NCBI RefSeq assembly: GCF_006345805.1 | Contig: NC_043001.1 | Span: forward strand, 87,792,001 to 87,856,000 | Direction of reading: 5' to 3' | DNA: 64,000 bases | Source of the DNA: Octopus sinensis | Lineage: Eukaryota | Part shown: one piece after another, positions 1-36,940 of the stretch | Position numbering within the stretch: position 1 is the first letter of the stretch | How the letters are laid out: every line of letters starts with the position of its first letter | The notes under the pieces: model-generated | Told to the model about the DNA's origin: nothing | What the model saw: the letters and a program-made list of their open reading frames with translations, nothing else | The model's database searches: none | Position numbers and translations under genes: made by a program

Positions 1-318
1 GAATCACTGGAAGATACTAGATCACATCAACTACATAGTCCACGATATATATCAGACTTTCAGACTATAGAGCCATCATATCCACATCGAGATTCACTGG
101 AAAGAAATGCATCAAATGTAGGGAAACCTGTCTCCTCTTCACATAATCGCGCGGGTCGTCGTATCCTCACAAAAGTAGCGAACAAATTACGAGATAAAGT
201 ACGCAGTATTTTTGGTAAAAAACGTATATGGGCGCCAGACACCTCATTTCATCCTCGAAGTTATTTACCAAAGAATGCCAGTTCCGCGGTTCTTCAAACC
301 TCTAAAAGAATAAATTAA
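1..318 (+). CDS. 3' end of repeat-protein family member A (5'-partial, runs off window)
   Basis: Frame 1 is open from base 1 to TAA 316-318: ESLEDTRSHQLHSPRYISDFQTIEPSYPHRDSLERNASN...KKRIWAPDTSF...SKRIN*. It aligns with copy C DSLELARSSQLREPRYAPEYQVIENSPHSYRGSLEPVN and copy B ELATSRQLHSPKYVSEYH. Absent from the ORF track because no start codon lies in the window. Confidence 0.7.
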   Translation, partial: ESLEDTRSHQLHSPRYISDFQTIEPSYPHRDSLERNASNVGKPVSSSHNRAGRRILTKVANKLRDKVRSIFGKKRIWAPDTSFHPRSYLPKNASSAVLQTSKRIN

Positions 319-1077
319 ACAGTATTTTACGTAGCCAAGACTGAATTTAAACCATGGAGGGCCTGAGCACTTGAAATTCTGTGGGCCCTTCATACATAAG
401 AATTAAAGTTATGGAAATATAGAAAATCTATATCTCAAAACCCATCTATTGGATGTAATTGGATGTGATGAGTTAGCAGAGAAATTTTAAATAAATGACT
501 AAAAATGTCGCTTTACGTGTCAAAATTCAATTCTTTTCCTCACATATTCACTTGCAGTGTTCGTTTTTATGTTCATTGTGGAAAGTACAATGCAGGAGAG
601 AAGAAGGGGATAGAATACGATAAAATGACAGAAAATTACAAAAAAGTAGTTTTACAAATGTTCACTACCTTACAAAAACTATATCAGCTAGGCAAATGAC
701 CTTCTCTAAATGCATCAAAAATACTATAACTTTCAAAACACTATTTCACAAAATTATCTCCGCTCTCTTTCAGCATATTAAAGACAAATTTAGATGGGGG
801 CCAAATGAATAAGACAAGATAAGGTAAATTTGCCTCTTCAAATTTTTCAGAATAACATTTGAAAGAAAACCTCGTACTCATCAATTTCCACTCTTAGACA
901 CTAGAAAGATCAGAAATTCAGCAAAACTTTAAAATATCTAGGTCAAACGAAAGAGAATTATGGAAAAATGGCACGATATGAAATTAACGAAACTCGACTA
1001 AATCAAATAACTCAACATAAAATATTCTCTATAGCTTCTCATGATCTGCTGGAGCAGCTCTCGGCAGAAAACTAGTT

Positions 1078-1531
1078 TAAGCACCCCATATAACCTCTCA
1101 TAACTTTTATATTTTGGGAATTTTCAAAAGTTTTTTGCGGATTTGTGTTCTACACACGGGAATTCATACAACTATTTAAAAATTCTCTTTTAGTTTTTCG
1201 AATTTTTCAAAAAGAACCACAGTTTAATATACGGACATTCCGAATTTTTTTTTTTTGCTTAATCGCAGCAATAGACCATTAAATGTGTTTATGGGGAGAA
1301 AGATTTTGAAAAACATCAAAACATCAGAATGACAAGTAAAAGGGGAGTGTACCAGCTGGTCTTGAGGCATGCTAAGAATTACAGCTAAATAGCTCTTAAA
1401 TCACTCACACCCACAAAAGTTTTCGTTGATTTTCATAGTCGTATGGATTCCCGTGTATAGAATACAAATTCGCAAAAATCTTCTGAAAATTTCAAACAAT
1501 AAAAGTTATGAGAGGTTATATGGGGTGCTTA
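1078..1531. repeat. Dispersed repeat / probable non-autonomous DNA element with ~105-bp imperfect inverted arms
   Basis: 1078-1110 is the exact reverse complement of 1499-1531 (33 bp), and imperfect pairing continues 1121-1185 vs ~1430-1490. Related sequence recurs at ~46190-46340 and ~46586-46610. Confidence 0.6.
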
Positions 1532-2029
1532 TTCATTCTGGTTCTCTTCCTGATACAGTTCTGCACCATGTAGTTAAAGAGAAGAGTTTATTGAAATTAG
1601 TCATTACTTATTTTGCCCCAGTTTAAAAATTATTTTTTTCAATATTGAAAATTATCAAATTGGACATTAATGCGGGGAAAATTGATGTGCAGTCTAACAG
1701 AGAAAAGAAAATTGATTGTTAAACATCAAAAAAGGTCGTGCTTCTGTTATTTTGTCAACCTTCAAATTTTCTCAACAAAAACCATAAGGGATTACTGAAA
1801 GCATAAACATCATCATAGTGGCACTGCAACACTGAAATATACTTCTGCCATGAAGTATCCTGTCACTGGCAAGAAAACCACTTCCTGCTTTCAGTTTCTG
1901 AATGGTGGTTCGAGACTAACTAAGTTGTTTATAGCCTTGATAAAGGTATCTCGAAATATAGCAAGTCGAAGTGACTCTAGCATCTATGAATAGGACAGAA
2001 TTGAATGATTTCTTGGAATCTAGTCACAC

Positions 2030-3429
2030 TGTAACCAAGCTCCATCTAACCTTTGATATCACAATTGTTTTTAGTCGCTGTATGAGGAGGATTCATCTAT
2101 TTGGCTATTCTCTTCTTCCTGCCTCCAAACATTGTTTCGATTTTGTTTTTCACTATCTCTTCTACCCAACAATATTCTCCTCACCTTCCTTTTCAAAACT
2201 CCTCACGGATATCCTAATGGGTTTAAATCAGGTGACATGGTAGGCCAAGGCAACGCCTTTACCTTTTTATCTGATAAAATCTTAGTCGTCATCTTTGAAG
2301 TGCGTTTAATGTCATTATCATGTTGGACCATGGAATGTCTTCCCAGTTCCTTCATGCTTTCAACATTTTCTGCAATATGTCACAATAAAGTCTTGAATCC
2401 ATTGTTCTCTCAATAAATGTAGGTCATCCCACACCAGCCTCACCCATGCATACCCAAAGCATAACATTTCCGCCGCCGTGTTTCACGCTAGGCACGGTGC
2501 AGCTGTCGCTATTATCTTCACCTGGTCGTCGCCATATTCGTTTAATACCATCTGACCCAAACAAGTTGATTTTAGTCGCGTCAGATAAAAGAATTTTATT
2601 TCAAAACTCCTTCCCCTTATTCACATAGGTTTTGGCAAAAGAAAGATGACTTGATTTATGCCTGGTCGTGAGGAGAGGCCTCCTACGAGGAATGCGTCCA
2701 TAAAGACCGCGCTGATTCAAACTTCGGCGAACTGTTTGGGCGGATACATTATTTCCACTAACAGAAGACACTTCTTGGGCCAAAGATGAAGCGATTCGAT
2801 GCCCATCGTCCATCGCGCAACGTTGGGTATGGTGAATATCATACGCAGTTAAAATAGTAGAACGACCTGGACCATGTTTATTACTTAGCCGTCCAGTAGC
2901 TTTGTACTTCTGAATTACTTTGGCAACTGTGTTTACGCTAATATGTATTCGTTTGCTATTTAACTTGTATCCTAAACCATTCTTGTGCAAATTAAAAATA
3001 ATTTTCTTCAAATCTTCCGACAATTCATTTCCTTTTGGTGACGTTTTAATCATAATGATTTTCACCATGGTACACAAATCAGAATTCCTGCAGATGCATT
3101 AACAATGATCAATGCAAAAATGCCAGGAGAAATAATTTATTAGTATTGAAATTATCAGCAATATCTGAATTTAGTAAAAAAAAGTGGATAAAATATTGAA
3201 TATAGCAAATTTCCTTTAGGGTGTACATATTTTTGCAACGTTTAAAACTTAATATTTCGTTCATATCTTTGAAAATGTTTATTGTTTTGTGCACCAAATT
3301 TGGATAATGTTTGCATGTATAATATATGTTATTCAGTATAAATTTCGTTTGATTTCCTTCAATATTATCACAATAGTAGCAAGTTTACCGAAATTGTTTT
3401 AAGGGTGTACATACTTCTGTGAGATACTG
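2030..3429 (-). mobile_element. Tc1-family DNA transposon, degenerate
   Basis: Minus ORF 2601-3077 is a Tc1 paired/HTH N-terminus (ELSEDLKKIIFNLHKNGLGYK...SAQTVRRSL...GRIPRRRPLL). Downstream frames give SD(A)TKINLFGSDG, VKHGGGNVMLW, QHDND and WPTMSPDLNPL with stops and frameshifts. The 5' TIR TA|CAGTATCTCACAGAAGTATGTACACCC ends at 3429, with an inner direct repeat near 3216-3231. Confidence 0.85.
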
Positions 3430-3990: not shown

Positions 3991-5240
3991 TACCACGAAA
4001 CTCTGTTAATTCCTATTAATGCTTGCATTGACATTTTACCTTCTTCCTTCATTGATCAACTCATCGATGGCACTGATGCATGCTGGTACTATTTCTTCGT
4101 AAAGTCCTAAGAAGTCGTTTAATGATTCTGGCCACGGTTTCTTCCAGACTCTTTTAATGCAGTTCTTTGTCACTCATCCCAGTTTGTTTTGATATTACCT
4201 ATGCTCTTTTTAGATGTGGTCAGTTTTTTCAATTGCCCTTGGTCATTAGTTTCTTTAATAAGTTGTTCGAGACGTTCGGCAAAAGTAATAGGTGTCGATA
4301 TCAGAAACTACACACTAATTCATATGTTGGAATAAGGAAGTGATGTTTGCTTATAGTTAAACTATCTCGACAAGAATATAGGTCTGAAGGGTGAAGAGAA
4401 TCTAGCAATGACCTGGAGTATTATTAAACAATAGTTTTATACTCAAGATCAGGTTCTTCACAATATCTTCCCGCTGCTACACAAAAGTATGATACAAGAT
4501 CCATTTTGAAAATTTCTATTATCATCTAGTTCTATCAATTTAATGTCCAAATCACAGGCAGATGCATTTCTGATATTTTCCTTATTAGTTCATTGGTTTA
4601 AATTGTTTCTTGTAGTATAATTACTAAGTAGTCTAATACTTTTGTTGAAAAACGATCTTTTCTGATCTTGGACATGGAGGCTGGCTTTTATTTCTTTTCG
4701 GGTGATAAAAGTGTGGAGTGAGTTTCTTTTCCAGAAAGTGGTCTGTCTCATCTCTAAGCTAATACTTTTGTTGAAAAACGATCTTTTCTGATCTTGGACA
4801 TGGAGGCTGGCTTTTATTTCTTTTCGGGTGATAAAAGTGTGGAGTGAGTTTCTTTTCCAGAAAGTGGTCTGTCTCATCTCTAAGCTGAAACAGAGACAAC
4901 TTCTGAGTAAGAAGACAGTTAAGGAACTTCTCCATACTTTCAAAAGTATTATCAAGCACGGCAGCTAATATTCCCAACATCTAACTTGAATATACATGTC
5001 GCGAAGGGTAGCTGCCACGTTTTATTATACTTTTAAGAATCTCGAAAAGTTTCTTGACTATTTGGGTGTCTAAGAATTTCCAGTTTCATTAGAGATGCTG
5101 ATGCTGTGTAGGTGATACCGTTGGTTTGCTTCTATCAAACAGATCCCTACCAGCTGTGAATCTTTCCGAATTATTGACACTGTCATATTCTTAGATTTTT
5201 AAAGATGCTCCTTGCTCTTCCATGATGAAAGTTGAATTAA
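3990..5240 (-). mobile_element. pogo/Tigger (DDE_1) transposase fossil
   Basis: Minus-strand frames give DET..FWKRNSLHTFITRKEIK, HLPVIW, RYCEEPDLEYKTI..NTPGH and CIKRVWKKPWPES. These resemble Tigger DETxxFWKKMPxRTFI, LPVxW, LLxDNAPGH and WKKLWP, with many stops. Confidence 0.65.
4633..4886. repeat. 126-bp tandem duplication (2 copies)
   Basis: ctaatacttttgttgaaaaacg...tctcatctctaag starts at 4633 and again at 4759; the copies look identical by eye. Confidence 0.9.
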
Positions 5241-6187: not shown

Positions 6188-6232
<45 letters not shown>

Positions 6233-8335: not shown

Positions 8336-9921
8336 CTCTATAGTATATAAAAGAAAGGATGATCCATTGACCATGTTGTTTAGCTGATAGAAATATGTTA
8401 ATTCTTGGTAACTCCTCCATTATCAAGCACTTTTCCTCACTCTGCACCTCACTCAAGATAAACCAATGGGTTTCGGGAAAATTTGTCAAGCGACGATCAA
8501 ATCTGTTCACTGTCACAGCTCACGTTTATAATATAAGTTATAGCATGCTGAGGCCTCGCTAAGTAACAGTCGGAGTAGTAAAACAGTAGTTATTTCAAAG
8601 TAGTAATATAACCAAATAGTAAAGAATTAAACTATCGAAGTTTTGTAGATATCTACCATAATTAATAAACTATCGAAGTTTTGTAGATATCTACTGTCCA
8701 CATTCGAACTTTAAGAGATAGCTTCCTCCCAGTTCGTTTCCGAGGAAAATCAGTTAATATATACAGCATGAGGCTCCAATTTCTATCCCAGCTCCATGTA
8801 ATTTAACTGGACATTGGTCAAGCTACAAAAGCTGGTGAATATAGACTTATCTTTCCAGGGGCAGAGTTACAAGTTCTCCCAAACGTCTTGGTTAATGAAT
8901 GATTCTTTTATTATTTCGTAATCCTTCAGCGTAGCACGAAATATAGATTTGCGATTCTGAAATTATTTGCTAGGGTCTATTTACAATATTGACCCTGTAT
9001 TGTTCTGACAACTCCATCATTTCAAAGTTCATCTAGAGACAGTGTTGACTAATATTTGTTCGTGCTGCCGTCCAATTCCTCAACATCAGTCATGAAGACA
9101 AAAATGTTAAGATGATACTGCAAGATATAAGTTTCAACGGTTGTTATGTATTCCAAAGTCAATATCTATACAGCAAAAGAAAGTGGGGTATGATGTGAAG
9201 GATATTCGGTTGTTATTTGTAGCTATATGAATAACACAGCCAAAAAGTGGATTGAAGGGCATTGTTGGGGTGAAGAACAGATCTGGTAGGCTGCAGAAAG
9301 CTCCTGAGAAGGCAAAGAATGCAGTTAAGCATGAAACATGAATGTGTAACTGAAATTTGAGGTTCTAAATTCTATGGATATTTTGCCACATTGTGTAAGA
9401 ACAACATTAAAAATCCTTGGATATGAACGAAGAGTTGCAAGAAATAAGCCTATGATTTTAAAATCCAATAAGACCAAAAGTTTCAACTGGACTAAAAAGT
9501 TTTGTAACAAAGAAAACAAATGTTACTTATCTATAATTTGGTCTAATAACAGTAACTCTTGCCAGATTTTGCAATTCTATGTAGATATACTTTGTGGCTC
9601 GTCTTTCGGTGAGGGAATCGATCAGATATAATTATGATTTTTAACATAACCACAAAACTGCAACCTTATGATGAAGAAATAGTTAATTAAAATCTACTTC
9701 AGTATTCAATTAATGCTTATTTTACCAACCTCAAGATGTTTGGACAGTGAGCGGAAATATACGTAACTGAATACAGCTAGACACTTTGTCTATTGTTTCA
9801 TTAATTGTGCCATTAGCAGCTGTTGTATATATATTCATATTAACAGCAACAGTAAAATGGTAGTGATGATATTACTACCACTGCCACAGTACGATACCGA
9901 AATGACTGTCACATTCATTGA

Positions 9922-9943
9922 TGACGTCATAGTTGAAAGTAAA
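9922..9943. promoter_or_regulatory. Full CRE (TGACGTCA) plus conserved AGTTGAAAGTAAA, copy B
   Basis: TGACGTCA at 9922-9929, 82 bp upstream of the ATA (10004) that aligns with the ATG of copies C and D. Confidence 0.6.
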
Positions 9944-10018
9944 TCATTATTGAATAATTTAGTTTTATTTCTCTGCATTGAGAATCAATTTGAATTGACC
10001 AGCATAAATACCACAGAA

Positions 10019-10212
10019 ATGGCTGACCGTTCACAATATCCAGATGATCTAAACGAGGAATTAGAGCTTGCTACATCACGTCAGCTACATAGTCCAAAAT
10101 ATGTATCAGAATATCACTTCAATGTAAGGCCATCACAACTACATCGAAATTTACTGGAACCTAACAATGCAGATCAAACACATAGATCATCAATGCATCA
10201 TCACGTCATTCC
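10019..10212 (+). pseudogene. Frameshifted N-terminal segment of family copy B
   Basis: MADRSQYPDDLNEELELATSRQLHSPKY... aligns with copy C. A 1-bp deletion near 10192 (agatcatca-atgcatca vs agatcattatatgcatca in C) disconnects it from ORF 10213-14379. Confidence 0.7.
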
Positions 10213-13200
10213 ATGTCTCCGTATAGGTCCCGACATTCACTACCACGCTGGAGCAGATCAATGCCATCATTTCGAGATGATTTATATCGTACTTATCCAC
10301 TGAGTCTTGCAACTAGTAGAAAACTGGCACCCATATTTCTACATAATTTAACCTATCAAGGGTACTCTACTGCCTACACAACACCATCACCGCATGGATT
10401 GCAACGTCTATCTGAACAAAAAGTATCTCCTCTCGTAACATGGGACCCTGATACTTCGAGACAGAGTCGTGATATTTGGAGGTATGGGCCAAGCACGGCA
10501 TCAAGACATACGGCAAGACGTGTTCATAGCACTAGTACATTACCGACAGAAAAAACAGAATTCCGTCATACTCGCATTGAGAGCTTTAGGAATAGCACAC
10601 CACAACGACATGGGACATCAAGTTTACGTATCAGAAGCCCATCAACATCAGAACCACCATTTCATGATAGTCATATTTCGAGCTCTGAACAAAGCTCAGG
10701 GTCACGATATTCGTTAACAATCCACCTTGGTAACAGTTCAGAGGAATATAGGGCACGTGACTTACATTCAACAGATACAATTTCTGATCTTGGAGAATTT
10801 GAACATCTAGTATCTCCTGATTCTTCGAGAGGGACTTCTGATTCTGACGACTATTTTACGGCATTCGGAGAAGATGCACATAATCCAGATTCGTCAAGTG
10901 GGTCATGTTTTTCAGATTATATCGGTGAAATGGAACATCTGTCAGAAAATGAAATAAGGTCTCATCTCTTAAACAGAGTGTGGGATAGTGCATTTTATCG
11001 TCAATATTCTCGAAGCCAGAGAGTTTCGCGAATTAGACCTGAAATGCCAAACGTTGGACAATGTGTATTTGAACAACAAATATCTCCTGACGCAACGCGG
11101 GATGCTGACACAACGCCGGACACTGATGCAACGGGGGAACCTGACGTAACACGGGACCCTGACGCTTCCAGACAAACTCGTGATTCTGATGACAATTTGG
11201 CATCATTTGGAAAAGATGCACGTAGTCTAGATTCGTCAAGTGGGTCATGTTTTTCAGATTATATCGGTGAAATGGAACATCTGTCAGCGGATGAAATTAG
11301 GTCCCATCCGTTAAACAGAGTGTGGGATAGAGCATTTTATCCTCGAAATCCTCCGAACAATAGAGTTTCGCGAATTATACCTGAAATGCCAAACGTTGAA
11401 CAATGTGTATTTGAACAACAATTATCTCCTTACGCAACGCGGGATCCTGAAACAACGCGGGACACTGACGCAGCACTGGACTCTGACACTTTCAGACGAA
11501 CTCGTGACTCTGATGACTATTTGGCAGCATTTGGAGAAGATGCACATAATCCAGATTCGTCAAGAGGGTCATGTTTTTCAGATTATATCGGTGAAATGGA
11601 ACCTCTGTCTGCGAATGAAATAAGGTCTCATCCCTTAAGCAGGCTGTGGGATAGAGCAATTTATCGTCGATATCCTCGAAGCCAGAGAGTTTCGCGGATT
11701 AGACCTGAAATGCCAAACGTTGAACAATGTGTATTTGAACAACAAATATCTCCTGACGCTATGCGGGATGCTGACACAAGGCGGGACCGTGACACAACGC
11801 GGGACCCTGACGCAGTGAGCGACCCTGACACTTCCAGACGAACTCGTGACTCTGATGACTATTTGGCAGCATTTGGAGAAGATGCACATAGTCCAGATTC
11901 GTCAAGTGGGTCATGTTTTTCAGATTATATCGGTGAAATGGAAGCTCTGTCTGCGAATGAAATAAGGTCTCACCCCTTAAGCAGGCTGTGGGATAGAGCA
12001 TTTTATCGTCGATATCCTCCAGGCCAGAGAGTTCCACGAATTAGACCTGAAATGCCAAACGTTGGACAATGTGTATTTGAACAACAAATATCTCCTGACG
12101 CAACGCGGGATGCTGACACAACGCGGGACAATGATGGAACGCGGGACCCTGACGCAACACAGGATCCTGATACTTCCAGACGAACTCGTGATTCTGACGA
12201 ATATTTGGCAGCATTTGGAGAAGATGCACGTAGTCCAGATTCGTCAAGAGGGTCATGTTTTTCAGATTTTATCGATGAAATGGAACATCTGTCAGCGGAT
12301 GAAGTAAGGTCTCACCTCTTAAACAGGCTGTGGGATAGAGCATTTTATCGTCAATACCCTCGAAGCCAGAGAGTTTCGCGAATTAGACCTGAAATGCCAA
12401 ACGTTGGACAATGTGTATTTGAACAACAAATATCTCCTGACGCAACGCAGGATGCTGACACAACGCGGGATGCTGACACAACGCGGGATGCTGACACAAC
12501 GCGAGACCGTGACATAACGTGGGAACCTAACGTAGCACGGGATTCTGACACTTCCAGACGAACTCGTGACTCTGATGACTGTTTGACAGCATTTGGAGAA
12601 GATGCACATAGTCCAGATTCGTCAAGTGGGTCATGTTTTTCAGATTATATTGGTGAAATGGAAGCTCTGTCAGCGGATGAAATAAGGTCTCATCCCTTAA
12701 GCAGATTGTGGGATAGAGCATTTTATCGTCAATATCCTCCAGGCCAGAGAGTTCCTCGAATTAGACCTGAAATGCCAAACGTTGAACAATGTGTATTTGA
12801 ACAACAAATATCTCCTGACGCAACGCTGGATGCTGACACAACGCCGGACACTGACGGAACGCGGGACCCTGACGCAACACAGGACCCTGATACTTCCAGA
12901 CGAACTCGTGATTCTGACAAATATTTAGCATCATTTGGAGAAGGTGCTCATAATCGAGATTCGTCAAGTGGGTCATGTTTTTCAGATTATATCGGTGAAA
13001 TGGAACATCTGTCAGCGGATGAAGTAAGGTCTCATCCCTTAAGCAGGCTGTGGGATAGAGCATTTTATCATCAATACCCTCGAGGCCAGAGAGTTCCACG
13101 AATTAGACCTGAAATGCCAAACGTTGAACAATGTGTATTTGAACAACAAGTAATACCTCTCGTTGCACGGGACTCTGATATCTCGAGGGAAAGAAGAACA

Positions 13201-14379: not shown

Positions 14380-14489
14380 TATCTCGAGACGGTGTTGTGA
14401 TGCTTTGAGCCATGAGCCAAGTCCACCATCAGGATATAGGGCGATAAGTTTTCAAAGCATCAGTACGATCATTGAGGAAAGGTTATTTG

Positions 14490-14539
14490 AATAAAATGAA
14501 CATTTTCAATTAAATATAACTGAAAAAGATATATTGTAT
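14490..14539 (+). terminator. Candidate polyadenylation signal and conserved 3' element, copy B
   Basis: AATAAA at 14490-14495 and TATATTGTAT at 14530-14539; the same arrangement follows copies C and D. Confidence 0.5.
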
Positions 14540-14740
14540 TTTAATATGAAAAAATGCACAACTTCTGAAATTATCTCCATATAACAATGGCCGATACAAC
14601 ATTATATAGGAAGAGAAGGGACCATAAAATAGAGAAAGAGAGCGAGATAGAGAAAGAGATAATGAAAGTTAATATGGGAGGTGCGCGATGCTTACACTTA
14701 CAAGACTTAGTTGTAATAGTCAACAATGAGTCAAGGTACA

Positions 14741-16493: not shown

Positions 16494-16574
<81 letters not shown>

Positions 16575-24330: not shown

Positions 24331-25123
24331 GGTTTTCTTTCAGTGGTTGACCGTTACTTTAAGTGGGTAAGGCACACAACCTGAAAACCATACACTGCCC
24401 GAACCTGTTCCCTATTCTCTAAGCAAAACTGCAAAATCGGTCCTTTAGTCCATTCAATCCAGGGCATTGTTGGGGTGAAGAACAGATCTGGAAGGCTTTA
24501 GAGAGCTCCTGAGAGAGCAAAAAAAAGAAAAGGCAGTTAAGAGGAAAATTACTAAATATGAATGTGTAACTGGAAGTGAGGCTGTAAATTCTACGGATAT
24601 GCTGCCACATTGTGTAAGAACAGTATTGAAAATCCTAGGATATGAACGTAGAGTTTCAAGAAATAAACTAATGATTTTAAAAGACCAAATAAGACAAATT
24701 GCTTCAACTGGGCTGTATGAAAGAAAACAAATGTTACTTATCTATAATATGGTCTGATAACAGCAACTCCTGTCAGATTTTGCAATTCTATGTAGATATA
24801 TTTTGTGGTTCGTCTTTCGGTGGTGGAATCGATCAGATATAATTATGATTTTTAACATAACCACAAAACTGTAACTTTATGATGAAGAAATAGTTGATTA
24901 AAATCTATTCAATTAATGCTTATTTTACCAATCTCAAGATGTTTGAACACAGAACGGAAATATAGGTATCCGAAAACAGTTAGTCCTTTTTTTTTATTGC
25001 TTCACTGATTGTGACATTAGCAGTTGTTATGTATTTAACTTAATATTCATATTTAATAGTAACAGTAAAATGATAGCGATGATACTACTACAGTACGATG
25101 CTGAAATGATTCAAATTCACTGG

Positions 25124-25145
25124 TGACGTCATAGTTGAAAGTAAA
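25124..25145. promoter_or_regulatory. Full CRE plus conserved AGTTGAAAGTAAA, copy C
   Basis: TGACGTCA at 25124-25131, 82 bp upstream of ATG 25206. Confidence 0.6.
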
Positions 25146-25205
25146 TCATTATTAAACTATTTAGTTTCAGTTCTCTGCATTGAGAATCAATTTGAGGTGA
25201 TCAGA

Positions 25206-28200
25206 ATGAATACCATAGAGAAAGACAGTATTTCGAGTTATGAACACCTCTACTCCCAAACTGAAGAAACGGCTGACCATTCACAATACCCAGATGATCT
25301 AAATGAGGAATTATGCATAACTACAGGACTGAATAAATGCGAAGCTATTATAGAAGATACTATTGGACATGTTGATTCTCTAGACAACGTTGGTGAAAAT
25401 TCTAATGCGAATGATAATGACGATATGATGAAAAGGATTGAAATAGATGTTAGGGTAAGTCAAAACAATGACCAGTTAAACGATTATGGTGAAAATTGCT
25501 CAGCAAAACATAACTATTCTAAAGACGTGAAAACTGAGCGATGTGTATGGGAAGTAGCAGACGATAAAAACGTGTATGTAAACAACAGATTGGAATGTGA
25601 GACACTGAATGGAGGAAAGGATGTCAGCCCTGACAAACATCCATTTAAATTGAACAAGGGAAGCGCAGAATTAGATAAGTTTTTACCAGAGGAAGACAAA
25701 GAAAATTTTGCAACGAACAAAGAATGCATAATCAAAGGAGGAAAAATATATTTGATATCAAGAATAAACTCACATGGCATTAATACAGCCACGGAAATGA
25801 TTCAAAATAGTATAACAAATTTAACTTACACGTTGTTTTATATTTCTAAATATTCAAGGAAGAAAAAATCGGAAAATAATGATGAAATTTCGTCAATTAG
25901 AAAACCATTCGAGGAATGCCAAAATTTCGCAACACAAGAACCTAACCTCAGTATACAAAAATCATACCCTCTCTGTATTTCGTCACGTCGATACAGAACT
26001 TCGTTTGCGGATATGTCATATAGCAACACATCGGTAAGAAAATCAATCAACTCATCTAGAAAAAATTCTAAAAGCAAAATTTCAGCGCTTTTGAGATGTC
26101 GGACATTTTCATATTCACGTAATAATAATAATTCAGCAGAACCACATTCGAGGCCACCCAGTCCAATATCACGGCGATTTCGTCGGTTACGAGATTCACT
26201 GGAACTTGCTGCTAGATCACGTGAGATACCAATTGCACATTTACCTCGCTCTTCTACACATGTACCATATAGTCGGTTACGAGATTCACTGGAACTTGCT
26301 GCTAGATCACGTGGGATACCAGTTGCACTTTTACCTTCTTCTACTACACATGTACCATATAGTCGGTTACGAGATTCACTAGAACTTGCTAGATCGCGTG
26401 GGGTACCAACTGAACTTTCACCTCATTCTACAGCACATATACCATATAGTCGGTTACGAGATTCACTGGAACTTGCTGCTAGATCACGTGGGATACCGGT
26501 TGCACTTTTACCTCCTTCTACAACACATGTACCATATAGTCGGTTACGAGATTCACTAGAACTTGCTAGATCACGTGGGGTACCAACTGGACTTTCAACT
26601 CATTCTACAGCACATATACCATATGGTCGGTTACGAGATTCACTGGAACTTGCTGCTAGATCACGTGGGATACCGGTTGCACTTTTACCTCCTTCTACAA
26701 CACATGTACCATATAGTCGGTTACGAGATTCACTAGAACTTGCTAGATCACGTGGGGTACCAACTGGACTTTCAACTCATTCTACAGCACATATACCATA
26801 TGGTCGGTTACGAGATTCACTGGAACTTGCTAGATCAAGTCAACTACGTGAGCCACGATATGCACCAGAATATCAAGTCATTGAAAACTCACCACACTCA
26901 TATCGAGGTTCACTGGAACCTGTCAATATAGATATATCAAATAGATCATTATATGCATCACCACGTTCTTCCATGTCTCCGTATAGGTCACAACATTCAC
27001 TGTCACGCTCGAGCATATCAATGCCATCGCTTCGTTGTCGTTGTAGATCGATCTCTGAACAAAGCATGCCGTCACAATATTGGTTACCAAGGCCACTTCG
27101 TAGAAGTTCAGTGCCAGCAGGCCTTTTGTGGCCTGCTACAAGCTCACCGGAACAATATAGGGTACGTGACTTACAAACAACAGATATAGTTGTTCCTCAA
27201 GAATTTGAAAAACAAGTATCTCCTTTCGTAACATGGGATCCTGATACGTCGAGATGGAGTCGTGATTTTGAAGACAGTTTGGCAGAATTTTGGGATAAAT
27301 CAAAGCGTATCGATGTTGTGGGTCGTGGTACCTCTACAAGACCAGCATCCATATTACGAGAGAAATCAAGAGGGGCCGACAGAGTTCACTGGCGTAGTTC
27401 TTTGGCGCCAGAAGCATCATTTCGTTTTCGTCGCCTTTCGAGCCCTAGACAAAGCACACCGTCTCCACATAGGTCTCCACGATTACGTAGCAGCAGTCCA
27501 TTGGCGCCAAGAACATCATTTCGTCTTCGTCGTAGTTCGAGCCCTAGACAAAGCACACCGTCTCCACATAGGTCTCCACGATTACGTAGCAGCAGTCCAT
27601 TGGCGCCAAGAACATCATTTCGTCTTCGTCGTAGTTCGAGCCCTAGACGAAGCACACCGTCTCCATATAGGTCGCCAAGATTACGTAGCAGCAGTCCATT
27701 GGCGCCAAGAACATCATTTCGTCTTCGTCGTAGTTCGAGCCCTAGACGAAGCACACCGTCTCCATATAGGTCGCCAAGATTACGTAGCAGCAGTCCATTG
27801 GCGCCAAGAACATCATTTCGTCTTCGTCATAGTTCGAGCTCTATACGAAGGGCACCATCACAGTATCGGTTACCAAGTACACGTCGTAGCAGTTCAATGC
27901 CAGCATGCCATTTGTGGCATACTACAAGCTCACCGGATAAATATAGGGTACGTGACTTACAAACATCAGATGTAGTTGTTCCTCAAGAACTTGAACAATT
28001 ATCTCCTATCAGAGCACCGTCACAGGACCCTTTGTGGTCTAACGCAAGCACACCCGAGCATTATAGGGTACGTGACTTTCAAACAACAAATATAATTGTT
28101 GATCCTCAAGAATTTGAAAAACAAGTAGGTCCTTTCGTAACATGGGACCCTGACACTTCGAGATTGAGTCGTGATTTTGAAGACAGTTTGGAAGAATTTT

Positions 28201-29651
28201 GGGAAAATTCTTACAGAGAAGATTCTAGGCATAAATCACCATTAGTGAAATATTCCAGCAGCAATTCATTGGGGCCAGAAACATCGTTCGATCTAAGTTA
28301 CATTTTGAGCCCTGGGCGAAGCACATCGTCATCATCCAGGTCACGAACTTTAGATAGCAGCAGTCCATTGGGGCCAGAAACATCATTTCGTCTTCGTCGT
28401 AGTTCGAGCTCTGGACGAAGCATACCGTCACAATATCAGTTGCCAAGTCCACGTCGCAGCAGTTCGAACTCCGGACGAAGGATACCATCGCAGTATCGGT
28501 TATCAAGGCCACTTCGCAGCAGTTCAGTGCCAGCGGGCCCTTTGTGGTCTGACGCAAGCACGCCCGAGCAATATAGGGTACGTGACTTTCAAACAACAAA
28601 TATAAGAATTGATCCTCAAGAATTTGAACAAGTATCTCCTTTCGTAACATGGGACCCTGACACGTCGAGATGGAGTCGTGATTTTGAAGACAGTTTGGCA
28701 GAATTATGGAATAAACCAATGCGTATCAATGTTGTGGGTCGTGGTACCTCTACAAAATCAGCAGCCATATTACCAGAGAAATCAAAAGGTGCCGACGGAG
28801 TAAGTCGTGGTACTTATACAAGGCCAGCGTCCATATTACGTGAGGAATCAATAGTTACTGATGGAGCACGTCGTGGTACTTATACGGTGCCAACGTCCAT
28901 GTTACATCGTGGTACCTATACGAAACCAGCGTCCATATTGAGGGATGAATCAAACCGTAGTAGTTCTAGCTATGATAGTAGTGCTTCGGCGGAATATAAG
29001 TCACGTAAGTTACGTGGCTTTCAAACAACAAATATAATAATTGATCCTCAAGAATTTGAAAAACAGGTATCTCCTTTCGTAACATGGGACCCTGACACTT
29101 CGAGATGGAGTCGTGATTTTGGAGATAGTTTGGAAGAATTTTGGGCAAATCCTTACAGAAAAGATTCTAGACATAAATCACCATTAGTGAAATATTCCAG
29201 CAGCAGTTCATTGGGGCCAGAAACATCGTTTGATCTTCGTCGCATTTCGAGCCCTTGGCGAAGCGCATCGTCATCATCCAGGTCACGAACTTTGGATAGC
29301 AGTTCATTGGGGCCAGACACATCGTTCGATCTTCGTCGCATTCCAAGCCCTTGGCGAAACATATTGTCATCATCCAGGTCACGAACATTAGATAGTAGCA
29401 CTTTATCGGAGCCAGAAACATCGTTCGATCTTCGTCGCATTTCGAGCCCTGGGCAAAGCACATTGTCATCATCCAGGTCACGAACTTTAGGGGAAGATAC
29501 TGAGAGCTCAGGTTCAGAGAGTTATTCTTCAAGTGCGTCATGTAGTTCATGTTATACCGATGAGCCAGATTCTATGTTAGCAGACGAAATACACTTTCAA
29601 TCCTTAAACAGGGCTTGGCATCGTCCAAACTTGAGGAGATTCTTGAATTAG
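25206..29651 (+). CDS. Repeat-protein family member C (~1481 aa; acidic N-terminus, Arg/Ser/Pro-rich tandem repeats), function unknown
   Basis: Uninterrupted single-exon ORF whose ATG aligns with copy D's ATG. The N-terminal ~220 aa align with D through in-frame indels (EVADD, GGKI, FYI.K..RK). It contains 90/87-bp and 99-bp coding arrays. Confidence 0.85.
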   Translation: MNTIEKDSISSYEHLYSQTEETADHSQYPDDLNEELCITTGLNKCEAIIEDTIGHVDSLDNVGENSNANDNDDMMKRIEIDVRVSQNNDQLNDYGENCSAKHNYSKDVKTERCVWEVADDKNVYVNNRLECETLNGGKDVSPDKHPFKLNKGSAELDKFLPEEDKENFATNKECIIKGGKIYLISRINSHGINTATEMIQNSITNLTYTLFYISKYSRKKKSENNDEISSIRKPFEECQNFATQEPNLSIQKSYPLCISSRRYRTSFADMSYSNTSVRKSINSSRKNSKSKISALLRCRTFSYSRNNNNSAEPHSRPPSPISRRFRRLRDSLELAARSREIPIAHLPRSSTHVPYSRLRDSLELAARSRGIPVALLPSSTTHVPYSRLRDSLELARSRGVPTELSPHSTAHIPYSRLRDSLELAARSRGIPVALLPPSTTHVPYSRLRDSLELARSRGVPTGLSTHSTAHIPYGRLRDSLELAARSRGIPVALLPPSTTHVPYSRLRDSLELARSRGVPTGLSTHSTAHIPYGRLRDSLELARSSQLREPRYAPEYQVIENSPHSYRGSLEPVNIDISNRSLYASPRSSMSPYRSQHSLSRSSISMPSLRCRCRSISEQSMPSQYWLPRPLRRSSVPAGLLWPATSSPEQYRVRDLQTTDIVVPQEFEKQVSPFVTWDPDTSRWSRDFEDSLAEFWDKSKRIDVVGRGTSTRPASILREKSRGADRVHWRSSLAPEASFRFRRLSSPRQSTPSPHRSPRLRSSSPLAPRTSFRLRRSSSPRQSTPSPHRSPRLRSSSPLAPRTSFRLRRSSSPRRSTPSPYRSPRLRSSSPLAPRTSFRLRRSSSPRRSTPSPYRSPRLRSSSPLAPRTSFRLRHSSSSIRRAPSQYRLPSTRRSSSMPACHLWHTTSSPDKYRVRDLQTSDVVVPQELEQLSPIRAPSQDPLWSNASTPEHYRVRDFQTTNIIVDPQEFEKQVGPFVTWDPDTSRLSRDFEDSLEEFWENSYREDSRHKSPLVKYSSSNSLGPETSFDLSYILSPGRSTSSSSRSRTLDSSSPLGPETSFRLRRSSSSGRSIPSQYQLPSPRRSSSNSGRRIPSQYRLSRPLRSSSVPAGPLWSDASTPEQYRVRDFQTTNIRIDPQEFEQVSPFVTWDPDTSRWSRDFEDSLAELWNKPMRINVVGRGTSTKSAAILPEKSKGADGVSRGTYTRPASILREESIVTDGARRGTYTVPTSMLHRGTYTKPASILRDESNRSSSSYDSSASAEYKSRKLRGFQTTNIIIDPQEFEKQVSPFVTWDPDTSRWSRDFGDSLEEFWANPYRKDSRHKSPLVKYSSSSSLGPETSFDLRRISSPWRSASSSSRSRTLDSSSLGPDTSFDLRRIPSPWRNILSSSRSRTLDSSTLSEPETSFDLRRISSPGQSTLSSSRSRTLGEDTESSGSESYSSSASCSSCYTDEPDSMLADEIHFQSLNRAWHRPNLRRFLN

Positions 29652-29710
29652 ACCTCAAATGCCAAACGTTGAATAAATGTCTATTTGAATTCGACGAAAA
29701 ATTTTAAGAA

Positions 29711-29738
29711 AATAAAACTGGAAAAAGTTATATTGTAT
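29711..29738 (+). terminator. Candidate polyadenylation signal and conserved 3' element, copy C
   Basis: AATAAA at 29711-29716 and TATATTGTAT at 29729-29738. Confidence 0.5.
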
Positions 29739-31273
29739 TTTAATACGAGAAAAATCAAATGCTTCTGAAATTTTCTGCATATCATAATAACCATAATTTA
29801 GTTGGTAGGTTGAATTCTCCAGTCACGCATTGCAGCATTTAGAAAAAGAGGAGGAGAGAATAAAAAAATGAGAGAGAGAAGAGAAAAGGAGATTGAGAGA
29901 GAGAAAGAGAGAATGTGTGTGTGTGTTTGTGTTAACATAGGAGGTGCGGGATGCGTCCATTTACTAGGCTTAGTAGTTACAGTCAATGAGTAAAGGAACA
30001 CTATACACACATATGGGGAGAGGGGTAGAGGGAGAGGTGTGTGAAATGTATAATTTTTTTTAACCAAGTTTTTTTCTCCGTTACTTAGCCCGTCTGTAAC
30101 GTTTTCACGTGATTAGTTGAAGAGAACGGCGAAGAGAGAAGGAACAAGGAGAGAGAACAAGTAAGTATGACGTCGAGTGAGAGAGAAAGCGGGAGAGTGC
30201 TGTGTATTAAGTCTATAAAATTGTTATAAAGTATATACAGTGTATATATAACGTGCATTAAGTAATCATTGTATTCCAGTTTCCTTCATTTTTTAATAAT
30301 TAGCAGATGAGCGACTATTTTTTAGTACAGACACAGCACAGACTACACTTTCAGGCTTTGGGATAACGTTTTCAGAAATAACCCAATAAGTTTACCATTA
30401 ATTCCATAAAATATTCACGGATCTCGCTAGTTATTATTGTATACATGACATATTTCTTGATGTTACCGTTTGTAGCAAAAGTATATTACCAAAGTTACCT
30501 GTTATATGACAAGTATCAAGCCTGTTTGAAATATTAATTGGCTGAACACATTGGCTCTGCAATCGAAATTTTACAGTGATTAAAAGGATAATTTTGTTAC
30601 CAATGCTCCTGGAGGAATCAATCTGCTAAATGTTGGTCTAGGTAATATTGCGACAAAGTAGCGAGTTGTCAGAATCGTTACCGCACTGGGCAAAATGTTT
30701 AATGGCATTTCGTCTGTCTTTCTTTAATCCTTTCGGGCAGAGAAAATTAGTACAAATCGAGCACTGAGGTCGATGTAGACGACTTACCTACTCTGCCGAA
30801 ATTGCTGGCCTCGTGCTAAATTTTGAAACCATTTATTGTTACAGTTCGCTACATTTTTAGTGTGTGCTTTAACTTCAAAACCTTGGTACAGTATTCACAG
30901 TAGCTCAATAACTATGGATGAAATGAAGAGAATGGTGTTTGACAGAAAGTAAAATAAAAGTAAATGTACCACCAGACAATATTCTTACTCACAATTAACT
31001 GTCATCTCTATATTTTAAAGTTTATATTAGACCGTAACTTAAACTCAATTCTACAGCGAAGACAAACTTGTAGTCTGACGTTCTAGGAACGACCAAACGG
31101 GGTAATAGTTAGTGGGGAGTGTGGGGTGGTGGATACAATGTGGATGACAAGAGACGGTGAGACGGGTGAGTCACTATTAGGAGATGAGAGAGAAGAGATT
31201 ACACATGAAGATCAGGTGCATAATATGTTGCTAGGCGACTTCGTGCCAATTAGTTGAGATGGTATCTATTCAG

Positions 31274-33598: not shown

Positions 33599-33667
<69 letters not shown>

Positions 33668-35560: not shown

Positions 35561-35589
35561 TTCGACGGAGGAGTCCATTATACGTATAA

Positions 35590-35620
<31 letters not shown>

Positions 35621-35653
35621 GCATGATGCCGAAATGATTGTCGCATTTATTGA

Positions 35654-35675
35654 TGACGTCACAGTTGAAAGTAAA
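35654..35675. promoter_or_regulatory. Full CRE plus conserved AGTTGAAAGTAAA, copy D
   Basis: TGACGTCA at 35654-35661, 79 bp upstream of ATG 35733. Confidence 0.6.
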
Positions 35676-35732
35676 ACAATAAATCATTTAGTATAATTTC
35701 TGTCCATTGAGAATCAATGTGAGGTGACCAGC

Positions 35733-36899
35733 ATGAATACCACAGAGAATGATAGTTTTTCGAGTTATCAACACCTCTGCTCCCAACCTGATCAAATGGC
35801 TGACCATAATCAATATCAAGACAATCTAAATGAAGAATCAGACCAAACTACAGGAGATAATAATGATATGTATTCTGAAGACGACAGTCGTGAAATAACT
35901 GATGAAGATGACATTGGTGATGAGAAGGAAAGTCAAAACAACGACCAGTTAGACGAAGATTTCTCATCAGAAGATGACTATCCAAAAGACGAGAAGGCTG
36001 AGATCTGTGTGTGTGAAGTAGCAGACGATGAGAACGGAGGTGAAAATAACATATTGGAAAGTAAGACACACAATGAAGACGTGAATGTCAGTCTGGATAA
36101 CATTACAGTTAAATTAAAGAGTGGAACGGCAGAATTTGATAAATCTGTACCAAACGAAGACGAGGGTAATTATGACACGCGTATGAAATATGCAATCGAA
36201 GGAGGGAAAATAAATACGATGTCAGACACTTACCCACACAATGTGAATAGTGATCTGGATAGATATCAAGACGGTGAATCATTTGTAATATATCGAATGT
36301 TTTATATTCCTAAATTTCCAAGGAAGCGGGAACCAGAATATGAGGTTGAAAACATCCCGTATACTGGTGTCTATGAACTTGAAAGACCGTACAGTCCGAG
36401 AGGTTTATTAGAACGTCGTACCCGCTCAATATCAGCGTCAGGACGTCGTATAAAGCTACCACGGGAACGTCATACCCATTCCATCCTGTTACCTGAACAT
36501 CATTTATATAAACGTCAAACCAGGTTAACCAAACCACTGAAATATCGCACTGCTTCAGTACCACGATATAGCTCTGGAGATACACCGAGACCCAGTCCTT
36601 TTACCATACGGTCCCCTAAAAACCGTGTTTTTGTTGAGGGTGAATCACGTGTAAAACTTGCACCTTATATACAGCCTCCTGATCTCCAAGAAGATGGTCA
36701 TGTGTCTGGTATGTCCGTAACTGGGACGTCTTTTCCAGGTTTTGCAGTCGATCCTATATCCGTGCCAGAGGCTAAGTCGAAATATAAAGCTTTGTTTCGA
36801 AAGTGGGATCCAGTGTTTTATAATGTCGATCTTCCACCATTTAAACAAAAGATAACTGTTAGCGAAATGCCAGATATTAAACGACAAATCTTTCAATAA
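35733..36899 (+). CDS. Repeat-protein family member D (388 aa; acidic N-half, basic middle, single C-terminal WDxxFY...EMP module), function unknown
   Basis: Intact ORF MNTTENDSFSSYQHL...KALFRKWDPVFYNVDLPPFKQKITVSEMPDIKRQIFQ*, homologous to B and C, with no internal tandem expansion. Confidence 0.85.
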   Translation: MNTTENDSFSSYQHLCSQPDQMADHNQYQDNLNEESDQTTGDNNDMYSEDDSREITDEDDIGDEKESQNNDQLDEDFSSEDDYPKDEKAEICVCEVADDENGGENNILESKTHNEDVNVSLDNITVKLKSGTAEFDKSVPNEDEGNYDTRMKYAIEGGKINTMSDTYPHNVNSDLDRYQDGESFVIYRMFYIPKFPRKREPEYEVENIPYTGVYELERPYSPRGLLERRTRSISASGRRIKLPRERHTHSILLPEHHLYKRQTRLTKPLKYRTASVPRYSSGDTPRPSPFTIRSPKNRVFVEGESRVKLAPYIQPPDLQEDGHVSGMSVTGTSFPGFAVDPISVPEAKSKYKALFRKWDPVFYNVDLPPFKQKITVSEMPDIKRQIFQ

Positions 36900-36906
36900 G
36901 AACCAA

Positions 36907-36940
36907 ATTAAAATGAATAACGTATATTGTATGTAAATAT
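36907..36940 (+). terminator. Candidate polyadenylation signal and conserved 3' element, copy D
   Basis: ATTAAA at 36907-36912, TATATTGTAT at 36923-36932, then TGTAAATA at 36933-36940. Confidence 0.45.

What the first reader, a model, noticed from the sequence alone, without database searches (positions are those of the whole stretch)
1..36940. Tandem array of four intronless, repeat-expanding genes of no recognisable family, sharing promoter and 3' architecture
Seen: four + strand paralogs (A 1-318 partial; B 10019/10213-14379; C 25206-29651; D 35733-36899). C and D share an acidic N-terminal ~220 aa alignable through in-frame indels. A, B and C share the SLE(L/D)xRSxQLxxPxY segment. B, C and D share several hundred bp of upstream DNA and the 3' end. 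Frames stay open over 1.2-4.4 kb while the proteins diverge strongly and differ about 4-fold in length, which argues for selection on translation. No signal peptide or transmembrane segment is apparent. Inference: a lineage-specific family of intracellular, largely disordered proteins evolving by birth-and-death and modular repeat amplification. Intronless tandem structure, fast divergence, Arg/Ser-Pro content and a proximal CRE together resemble germline (spermatid) genes, but that role is a hypothesis.
Basis: partly seen in the sequence, partly recalled or inferred. Interest (0 to 1): 0.85.

Follow-up and report, generated by a model that had tools for sequence, protein, structure and literature searches.

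The report
Octopus-only disordered-protein gene cluster
The window holds four of the ten members of a gene family found only in octopuses; the proteins are fast-changing, unstructured and repeat-expanding, every copy sits behind the same strongly conserved DNA switch (a cAMP-response-element block), and what the proteins do and where they are made is still unknown.

Summary
The window is Octopus sinensis chromosome C5. ORFs A, B, C and D are real paralogs. They belong to a seven-gene tandem cluster that extends about 30 kb upstream of the window. Two more copies lie at 17.98 Mb on C5 and one on C12, giving ten loci in the genome.

Each locus is preceded by the same ~95-bp block, which holds an invariant palindromic CRE (TGACGTCA). 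The 25-mer around it occurs exactly ten times in 2.72 Gb. This block averages 83% identity between paralogs whose coding sequences have dS up to 1.6.

A profile search of 1.84 billion proteins, Pfam and PDB found relatives only in octopuses. The proteins have no signal peptide or membrane segment, and AlphaFold2 predicts disorder. Most carry an acidic N-domain and a basic Ser/Arg-rich repeat region; some carry a C-terminal Trp/Phe/Met-Pro module.

Constraint on residues is weak (dN/dS about 0.6). The open frames are nevertheless maintained: 8.8 stops are expected in B's repeats and none is seen. Repeat number differs between O. sinensis and O. vulgaris. B has lost the N-domain and, in this assembly only, carries a 1-nt frameshift.

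The spermatid role, transcription and the transcription start site could not be tested.

The parts
1..318 (+). Gene A: last 105 codons and the stop of a 643-codon single ORF that starts 1,613 bp before the window. It is an A-type member: N-domain, 45-aa basic repeats and a tail ending ...KRIN, with no C-module.
   Evidence: The O. vulgaris ortholog P0007 is 98% identical and is called as a single exon.
9564..9832 (+). Distal conserved upstream block ('block 2') of gene B. It is found in 9 of the 10 family members, at a variable distance from the ATG.
   Evidence: It is 75-83% identical between paralogs whose dS is 0.35-0.7.
9913..10003 (+). Proximal conserved block of B. It holds the CRE TGACGTCA at 9922-9929 and follows a (CTA)n-type microsatellite.
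10004..10212 (+). Degenerate 5' end of B. The family ATG is ATA (10004-10006), and the N-domain is deleted except for the MADRSQYPDDLNEEL segment, which starts at ATG 10019. One base is missing between 10192 and 10193 compared with O. vulgaris, where this segment is in frame with the long ORF.
10213..14379 (+). Gene B long ORF (1388 codons). It holds nine copies of the C-terminal module, in 108-126-aa short units (342-bp period, 10839-13149) and about 200-aa long units.
   Evidence: There are no stops where 8.8 are expected, and all indels are multiples of 3.
14472..14588 (+). Shared 3' flank and 3'-UTR block of B, with AATAAA and ATTAAA signals 111 and 130 nt after the stop.
25115..25205 (+). 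Proximal conserved block of C, with the CRE at 25124-25131.
25206..29651 (+). Gene C (1481 codons). It has the acidic N-domain, 29/30-aa SLELA repeats (26182-26831), 33-aa RSSSP repeats (27402-27850), four W-rich motifs, 32-aa repeats (29202-29488) and a truncated C-module. A remnant of the module tail lies out of frame just after the stop.
   Evidence: The RefSeq model XP_036359032.1 is named 'SRRM2-like'. The O. vulgaris ortholog has one extra 33-aa unit.
29669..29788 (+). Shared 3' flank and 3'-UTR block of C.
35645..35732 (+). Proximal conserved block of D, with the CRE at 35654-35661.
35733..36899 (+). Gene D (388 codons), the compact member. It has the acidic N-domain (pI 4.1), a basic linker (pI 10.4) and one C-module. 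An ATTAAA signal lies 8 nt after the stop.
   Evidence: Orthologs are 99% identical in O. vulgaris and 80% in O. bimaculoides.

Best explanation
These are real protein-coding genes of a gene family restricted to octopuses, with ten loci in Octopus sinensis. The family grew by tandem DNA duplication of whole units. Each unit comprises at least 1.5 kb of upstream DNA, a single coding exon and a 3' flank.

The products are non-secreted, intrinsically disordered proteins built from four parts:
1. An acidic N-domain of about 215 aa.
2. A basic Ser/Arg/Pro-rich region, made of in-frame minisatellites that differ between family types.
3. A Trp-rich acidic motif.
4. A C-terminal module of 60-95 aa (SGSCF..Y ... 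LNR.W..AFY ... EMP.V.QC.F) that is predicted to hold one amphipathic helix.

The copies differ mainly in how many motif units they carry: one C-module in D and L007, four to five in L008 and nine in B. They also differ in which parts have been lost.

All ten copies keep the same proximal block with a perfect palindromic CRE. Most also keep a second upstream block. I infer that the family is switched on together by a CREB/CREM/ATF-type bZIP factor in a restricted cell type.

I also infer that the proteins act as multivalent, phosphorylation-regulated scaffolds or adaptors. On this view, selection acts on the open frame, on a few short aromatic motifs and on their number, not on most residues. 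The male germline is the best single guess for the tissue, but this is untested.

Shown: family membership, taxonomic restriction, predicted disorder, conservation of the regulatory blocks, maintenance of the ORFs, and repeat turnover between sister species.

Inferred: bZIP control, a restricted expression site, and the scaffold function.
For: - **Ten loci.** A six-frame search of the genome with D found 9 places. B is the tenth, found by its modules and its upstream block. The 25-mer TGRTGACGTCAYAGTTGAAHGKRAA occurs 10 times and the reversed control 0 times.
- **Octopus only.** Relatives came only from O. vulgaris, O. bimaculoides, O. sinensis and one unidentified octopod. The single other hit was a bacterial repeat protein at E = 7e-5. 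Pfam and PDB gave nothing.
- **Disorder and no export signal.**
- **Regulatory block conserved beyond the neutral rate.** Its mean pairwise identity is 83%, and 77-87% against L009. The coding sequence of L009 has dS 1.06-1.6 and 27-33% amino-acid identity to the others.
  - The CpG-containing 8-mer is invariant. Its flanks switch between the two symmetric 10-mers ATGACGTCAT and GTGACGTCAC, which fits a dimeric DNA-binding protein.
  - The block is not coding. The upstream frame has stops in A, L004 and D.
- **ORF maintenance.** No stops are seen where 8.8 are expected in seven B units, 0 of 2000 simulations had none, and all indels are in frame.
  - Orthologs are intact in 3-4 species.
  - The pooled dN/dS between O. 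sinensis and O. vulgaris is 0.59, from 25 synonymous and 50 nonsynonymous changes. My binomial estimate against the neutral 3.4:1 expectation gives p of about 0.02.
- **Repeat turnover.** C gains one 33-aa unit in O. vulgaris. The B ortholog is 1378 aa there, against about 1491 codons for the equivalent span here. That fits one 114-aa unit fewer, inferred from lengths only.
- **Birth and death.** See the tree, the dead remnant at C5:87767504-87768444, the truncated module in C and the N-domain loss in B.
Against: - No expression data could be reached, so transcription itself is unproven here.
  - The Logan contigs that carry intact orthologs could come from RNA or from genomic reads.
  - Those contigs extend 505-539 nt (L007-type) and 90-146 nt (L009-type) upstream of the ATG. 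If they are mRNAs, the CRE block lies inside the transcribed leader, not in front of the start site.
- dN/dS of 0.35-1.16 between paralogs and 0.36-1.48 between B units is close to neutral. Most residues are therefore unconstrained, and part of the family may be decaying.
- As assembled in O. sinensis, B cannot be translated from the family start.
- The star-tree assumption in the stop-codon simulation overcounts independent substitutions.
- No binding partner, phosphorylation or localisation is known.
Confidence: 0.7

Rival explanations
1. These are spermatid or male-germline genes: CREM-like control from a proximal CRE, compact genes with uninterrupted coding regions, and rapidly evolving Ser/Arg-rich products with an acidic leader and a basic body that act in sperm chromatin or sperm structure.
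For: - The CRE is invariant, 61-85 nt before the ATG, in all ten copies.
- The coding regions are single ORFs.
- dN/dS is about 0.6 and repeat number changes between sister species.
- A, C, D, L002, L004 and L007 have an acidic N-domain (pI 4-5) and a basic remainder (pI 10-11).
- No member was found by exact look-up in transcript-like public contigs of O. vulgaris or O. sinensis. This is weakly compatible with narrow expression.
Against: - No tissue data were available.
- Arginine is 6-12%, far below protamines.
- B, L008 and L009 are acidic overall.
- CREs also drive neuronal activity-dependent, endocrine and stress genes.
- The exact-match look-up is a weak test of expression.
Confidence: 0.3
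2. The array is largely non-functional: young duplicates and pseudogenes whose long frames persist only because the repeats are recent.
For: - dN/dS is near 1 for several pairs.
- B is frameshifted and lacks its start codon.
- O. sinensis L003 is truncated compared with O. vulgaris.
- C's module is truncated.
- There is a dead remnant in the cluster.
Against: - Zero stops are seen against 8.8 expected in B, and all indels are in frame.
- All five lineages have intact orthologs across species that differ by 20-30% in amino-acid sequence.
- The pooled ortholog dN/dS is below 1.
- The upstream blocks are conserved far beyond the neutral rate.
Confidence: 0.1
3. They are serine/arginine repetitive matrix (SRRM2-like) splicing co-factors, as the RefSeq name for C says.
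For: C has 83 RS/SR dipeptides and 19% Ser and 12% Arg. RefSeq names it 'SRRM2-like'.
Against: There is no cwf21, RRM or other domain. No relatives exist outside octopuses. The other family members are not RS-rich. The name rests on composition only.
Confidence: 0.03
4. They are ORFs of a mobile element or an endogenous virus.
For: The ORFs are multi-copy and uninterrupted, and transposon fragments lie in the intergenic DNA.
Against: - There are only ten copies, at three loci, and the cluster copies found in O. vulgaris lie in the same order and spacing.
- There is no transposase, RT, integrase or capsid domain.
- No terminal repeats frame the units.
- The duplicated units include long upstream host-like DNA.
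Confidence: 0.02

Closest known systems
Mammalian post-meiotic spermatid genes under CREM control (protamines, transition proteins and similar). The comparison is from general knowledge.
   Same: A full palindromic CRE lies close to the start of the gene. The genes are compact, clustered and fast-evolving, and the products are basic, Ser/Arg-rich and disordered.
   Different: There is no sequence relationship. The proteins are far larger (388-1481 aa), have only 6-12% Arg, and carry an acidic N-domain and tandem repeats. Testis expression and CREM dependence were not tested.
SRRM2 and other SR-related matrix proteins (the RefSeq name of gene C)
   Same: Long disordered Ser/Arg/Pro-rich repeats in C.
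   Different: There is no cwf21 domain and no orthology outside octopuses. The other nine members lack the RS-rich composition.
Taxon-restricted cephalopod gene families in tandem arrays, such as reflectins. The comparison is from general knowledge (Albertin et al. 2015).
   Same: The family is confined to one lineage, tandemly duplicated and repeat-built, with no homologs outside the clade.
   Different: The sequence, composition and repeat motifs are unrelated. This family is confined to octopods as far as the databases show, and its tissue is unknown.
Lineage-restricted disordered scaffold proteins of germ granules (Oskar, Bucky ball, MEG proteins). This is an analogy from general knowledge.
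   Same: Rapidly evolving, clade-restricted and largely disordered proteins, with short conserved motifs and blocks of opposite charge.
   Different: The resemblance is purely architectural. There is no evidence here for condensates or a germ-plasm role.

Membership tests
SRRM2 / SR-related matrix proteins | N-terminal cwf21 domain (Pfam PF08312) | tested here: not met
   hmmscan of A, B, C, D and six relatives found no cwf21 hit even at E up to 1.
SRRM2 / SR-related matrix proteins | Orthologs across animals | tested here: not met
   A profile search of 1.84 billion representative proteins returned only octopus proteins.
Protamines / sperm nuclear basic proteins | Small, very Arg-rich proteins (roughly half Arg or more) | tested here: not met
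   The proteins are 388-1481 aa with 6-12% Arg.
Transposable-element or viral ORF | A transposase, RT, integrase or capsid domain in the ORF | tested here: not met
   The family ORFs have no such Pfam hit. The RT and Tc1 hits lie in separate intergenic ORFs.
Transposable-element or viral ORF | Many dispersed copies | tested here: not met
   There are ten loci at three places in 2.72 Gb.
Retrogenes (processed copies) | The copy begins at the mRNA 5' end, lacks the parental promoter and ends in a poly(A) tract | tested here: not met
   Paralogs share 0.9-1.6 kb of upstream DNA in collinear blocks, and also 3' flank. No A-tracts are seen at the unit ends.
CREB/CREM-regulated gene battery (a functional class) | Conserved full CRE TGACGTCA near the gene start | tested here: met
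   The CRE is invariant in all ten copies, 61-85 nt before the ATG. It occurs only three times in the window, once before each of B, C and D.
CREB/CREM-regulated gene battery (a functional class) | bZIP binding and cAMP- or CREM-dependent transcription | not testable with these tools
   This needs EMSA, ChIP or reporter assays.
Spermatid-specific genes | Testis or post-meiotic expression | not testable with these tools
   No tissue-resolved RNA data could be reached. The species and tissue of Logan runs SRR11869384-94 were not identified.

The most novel reading that the evidence does not exclude
This is an octopod-born family of germline (or other single-cell-type) scaffold proteins. In this reading the conserved CRE leader, not the protein sequence, is the most constrained part. 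The number of short binding modules (1 to 9 per protein) is retuned even between the sister species O. sinensis and O. vulgaris. That would make it a candidate for reproductive or cell-type innovation, and for divergence between cryptic octopus species.
Probability: 0.2. Interest if true: 0.6.

Novelty: new member of a known kind. Interest (0 to 1): 0.4.

Why it matters
Cephalopod genomes hold many clade-specific genes of unknown role, and this family gives a well-defined case to study.

- It has ten members, a clear modular grammar and intact orthologs in several octopus species.
- Its repeat number changes between two species that differ by only about 1% in DNA.
- Its regulatory block is far better conserved than the proteins. 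This gives a ready handle for reporters, bZIP binding tests and a search for the cell type.

The work also corrects database annotation. RefSeq calls C 'SRRM2-like' on composition alone, and it has a model that joins three paralogs.

If expression proves to be germline-specific, the family would be a rare invertebrate parallel to CREM-driven spermatid genes.

Tried and rejected
- **Pfam.** Scans of all members gave only sub-threshold or chance hits, such as CCDC85 in the A-type coil-like repeat.
- **PDB.** A profile search found nothing.
- **AlphaFold2.** D (pLDDT 33.6) and the C-module (pLDDT 55.5) were too poorly predicted for a fold search, so none was run.
- **Word-indexed homolog search with B.** It returned nothing because low-complexity words filled the candidate list, so it is uninformative.
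- **Exact look-ups in public assemblies.** Look-ups of O. sinensis D and L007, and of O. vulgaris D and A, found only the O. vulgaris genome.
- **Logan contigs with orthologs.** DNA for these contigs could not be fetched. I first read them as mRNAs. I withdrew that reading because contig ends of that kind also arise in genomic assemblies.
- **Literature searches.** Searches for the SRA runs, protein and gene accessions, the RefSeq name and general terms found no paper on this family.
- **Upstream ATG in the conserved block.** I considered it as the true start, as the O. vulgaris annotation does for B. I rejected this as a family feature because the frame is closed in A, L004 and D and the ATG is missing in L003 and L009.
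- **Splice acceptor before the block.** A (CTA)n-CAG acceptor was considered. It is present in only about six of the ten copies, so this is unresolved.
- **Alignment query on the own genome.** The tool does not accept an alignment as query for this genome.

Full report
**Where the window lies.** The window is G000:C5:87792001-87856000 in a 2.72-Gb, 13,516-contig genome. A RefSeq protein of Octopus sinensis (LOC118763368) sits on a contig of exactly the length of C5, so the genome is O. sinensis. The nearest other assembly is O. vulgaris GCA_951406725.2, record OX597818.1.

**Check of the observation.**
- A (1-318) is the tail of a 643-codon ORF that begins 1,613 bp before the window.
- C and D align over their first ~220 residues at 41% identity, E = 8e-43, with in-frame gaps.
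- B aligns with the middle and 3' part of C.
- B and D share a C-terminal module that is weak pairwise. It is clear in a multiple alignment, with nearly invariant F, R, W, M-P and F.
- A self-comparison of the window shows the shared non-coding DNA. B and C share 789 bp at 81% directly upstream, and 826 bp more at 77%. B and D share four upstream blocks. C and D share two blocks, the second running from upstream DNA into the first ~550 nt of coding sequence. B and C share a 3' block.
- A short 3' motif around the poly(A) signal is also shared by D and by a distant paralog.

**The family is larger than the window shows.** A six-frame search of the whole genome with D found nine places.
- Four further copies lie upstream in the same array. 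Three are on the + strand and one on the - strand, with ORFs of 432-476, 597, 771-805 and 643 codons. The last is A.
- Two copies lie at C5:17.98 Mb (482 and 927 codons).
- One copy lies on C12 (662 codons).
- B does not appear in that search because it has lost the N-domain. It was found by its modules and by its upstream block.
- A 25-nt consensus around the CRE occurs exactly ten times in the genome, once before each member, and the reversed control occurs zero times.
- One dead remnant, with several frames and stops, lies between two upstream members.

**What the proteins look like.** The 482-aa copy at 17.98 Mb (L007) and D carry the full plan. This plan is an acidic N-domain of about 215 aa (pI 4.1-5.3), a basic Ser/Arg/Lys/Pro-rich region (pI 10-11) and a C-terminal module.
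- C inserts three different in-frame minisatellites of 29/30, 33 and 32 aa, and four copies of a Trp-rich acidic motif. It ends in a truncated module whose tail persists out of frame after the stop.
- B holds nine modules, in 108-126-aa and ~200-aa units.
- The A-type genes replaced the module by another tail.
- No protein has a hydrophobic stretch. The highest 19-residue Kyte-Doolittle mean is 0.77.
- AlphaFold2 gives D a mean pLDDT of 33.6 with almost no secondary structure. It gives the module a pLDDT of 55.5 with one helix over the ...ADE..SH.LNR.W..AFY stretch.
- I ran no fold search because such models give meaningless matches.

**No known family.**
- Pfam gave nothing above threshold for ten members.
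- A profile of the N-domain and the C-module found no PDB chain.
- The same 440-position profile was run with HMMER against 1.84 billion representative proteins. It found eight octopus proteins and one spurious bacterial repeat protein at E = 7e-5.
- The octopus hits are 'hypothetical' or 'uncharacterized' proteins of O. vulgaris, O. bimaculoides and O. sinensis, plus two proteins from Logan assemblies of runs SRR11869384-94. I could not identify the species of those runs.
- RefSeq names C 'serine/arginine repetitive matrix protein 2-like'. That name reflects composition only.

**B in detail.** An alignment of the three upstream regions shows the following.
- The family ATG is ATA in B (10004-10006).
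- Only the MADxSQYPDDLNEEL piece of the N-domain remains. It starts at ATG 10019 and is joined directly to the end of the SLELA region.
- In O. vulgaris this short segment is in frame with the long ORF, and the gene is annotated as a 1378-aa product.
- O. sinensis lacks one base between 10192 and 10193, which breaks the frame.
- I cannot tell a real frameshift from an assembly indel.
- The O. sinensis copy L003 also differs from its O. vulgaris ortholog by a frame change near its end.

**Selection.**
- Nei-Gojobori dN/dS for the N-domain between paralogs is 0.35-1.16, mostly 0.6-0.8. For C against D it is 0.68. Between B's modules it is 0.36-1.48.
- Between O. sinensis and O. vulgaris orthologs (A, L002, D and most of C) there are 25 synonymous and 50 nonsynonymous changes, giving a pooled dN/dS of 0.59. 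dS is 0.012, similar to intergenic divergence of 0.006-0.024. By my own binomial estimate this differs from neutrality at about p = 0.02.
- Most residues are therefore weakly constrained, but the frames are kept. I placed the observed 213 substitutions at random on the consensus of B's seven short units. This gave a mean of 8.8 stop codons, and none of 2000 trials was free of stops. The real sequence has none, and every indel is a multiple of three. The star-tree assumption overstates the expectation. Halving it still makes an open frame unlikely.
- All five family lineages have intact orthologs in other species: D at 80% identity in O. bimaculoides, and L007 at 70% in the unidentified octopod.

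**Turnover.**
- The tree shows that the L009, D, C, L007/L008 and A-type lineages predate the species splits. The A/L004/L002/L003 and L007/L008 duplications are younger.
- O. vulgaris C has one more 33-aa unit than O. sinensis C and is otherwise 98.3% identical.
- The length of the O. vulgaris B product fits one 114-aa unit fewer. This is inferred from lengths only.

**The regulatory blocks.**
- In all ten copies, the ~95 bp before the ATG align at a mean of 83% identity. For L009 against the rest the figure is 77-87%, although L009's coding sequence has dS 1.06-1.6 and 27-33% amino-acid identity to the others.
- TGACGTCA is invariant and lies 61-85 nt before the ATG. Its CpG has survived in every copy. 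The flanks alternate between the two symmetric 10-mers ATGACGTCAT and GTGACGTCAC. This pattern suits a dimeric bZIP site on DNA better than an RNA element.
- These are the only three TGACGTCA sites in the window.
- The block is not coding, because the upstream frame is closed in A, L004 and D.
- A microsatellite precedes the block in every copy.
- A second block of 150-280 bp is shared by nine members at 75-83% identity. Its distance from the ATG varies from about 150 to about 1,500 nt because of insertions.
- Whether these blocks are promoter, enhancer or transcribed leader is open. The Logan contigs carry 505-539 nt (L007-type) and 90-146 nt (L009-type) upstream of the ATG. If those contigs are mRNAs, the CRE is downstream of the start site. 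They may instead be genomic contigs, so they do not prove transcription either.

**Introns.**
- The O. vulgaris gene calls for A, the L002 ortholog and D are single-exon, since gene length equals product length.
- The O. sinensis RefSeq models remove part of C's ORF (P0015) and splice L004 to A to B (P0009). I read these as alignment artefacts across repeats and paralogs. They hint that RNA reads exist, but I could not check.

**Interpretation.**
This is a lineage-specific family of non-secreted, disordered proteins evolving by birth-and-death and by modular in-frame repeat amplification.
- I add that the family is a closed set of ten co-marked genes. The regulatory block is its most conserved part, and the unit that varies in number is a short aromatic, helix-forming module.
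- My best mechanistic guess is joint control by a CREB/CREM/ATF-type factor in a restricted cell type, with the proteins acting as multivalent, phosphorylation-regulated scaffolds.
- The male germline is the most attractive site, at about 0.3, but nothing here tests it.
- The rival readings (decaying pseudogenes, SRRM2-like factors and mobile-element ORFs) are each contradicted by tests listed in the report sections.

**Novelty.** The genes are already in databases as hypothetical proteins. No paper on them was found in six literature searches. Clade-restricted tandem families are a known kind in cephalopods. This is a new, well-delimited example, not a new kind of system.

Noticed in passing
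window 10192-10193: One base present in O. vulgaris is missing here. It splits gene B into a short 5' frame and the 1388-codon ORF. It is either a real frameshift specific to O. sinensis or an assembly indel.
   Followed up: partly
G000:C5:87764086-87764210 (L003 tail, outside the window): The O. sinensis L003 copy stops early, after ...EPPPP. The O. vulgaris ortholog (P0010) reads on to a ...RRIN tail, which is still visible here in another frame. This is a second frame difference between the two assemblies.
   Followed up: partly
G000:C5:87767504-87768444 (about 24 kb upstream of the window): Dead remnant of a family member. It holds a C-like middle region and one C-module, spread over several frames and with stop codons.
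   Followed up: partly
RefSeq models P0009 (LOC118763368 isoform X2) and P0015 (XP_036359032.1): P0009 joins pieces of three paralogs (L004, A and the 10019 frame of B). P0015 removes 143 codons from inside C's ORF and gives it a different end. Both look like spliced-alignment artefacts across repeats.
   Followed up: partly
window 2601-3077 (-): Remnant of a Tc1/mariner-type transposase, with HTH_Tnp_Tc3_2 and Sleeping Beauty HTH domains, in the A-B intergenic DNA.
   Followed up: partly
window 39925-40518 (-) and 56728-57969 (-): Fragments of non-LTR retrotransposon ORFs (zf-RVT; RVT_1 plus a weak PHD-like hit). The regions 18349-20972 and 39988-44765 are diverged copies of one another (66-72% identity), the first piece in the same orientation and the others inverted.
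   Followed up: partly
window 15457-15656, 31302-31504, 53095-53296; also 16540-16766, 45617-45846, 51237-51442: Two short interspersed repeat families, each with three copies in the window at 85-94% identity. They are probably SINEs. One similar element lies just after the L007 gene.
   Followed up: no
window 4633-4886: A perfect tandem duplication of a 126-bp unit (2.0 copies, 100% match), which suggests a very recent event or an assembly artefact.
   Followed up: no
window 56254-56610: A GC-rich 67-bp tandem repeat (about 5 copies) overlapping a long + strand ORF opposite the RT fragment.
   Followed up: no
window 47037-47261 (+): First exon of the next conserved gene. The O. vulgaris annotation has a 452-aa product here with an Aminotran_5 domain, and its N-terminus looks like a mitochondrial presequence. 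This marks the right-hand end of the family cluster.
   Followed up: partly
upstream of every family member (for example window 9880-9905, 25095-25110, 35600-35640): A trinucleotide microsatellite ((CTA)n, (ATA)n or (GAT)n) sits directly before the conserved CRE block in all ten copies, while its repeat unit differs between copies.
   Followed up: no
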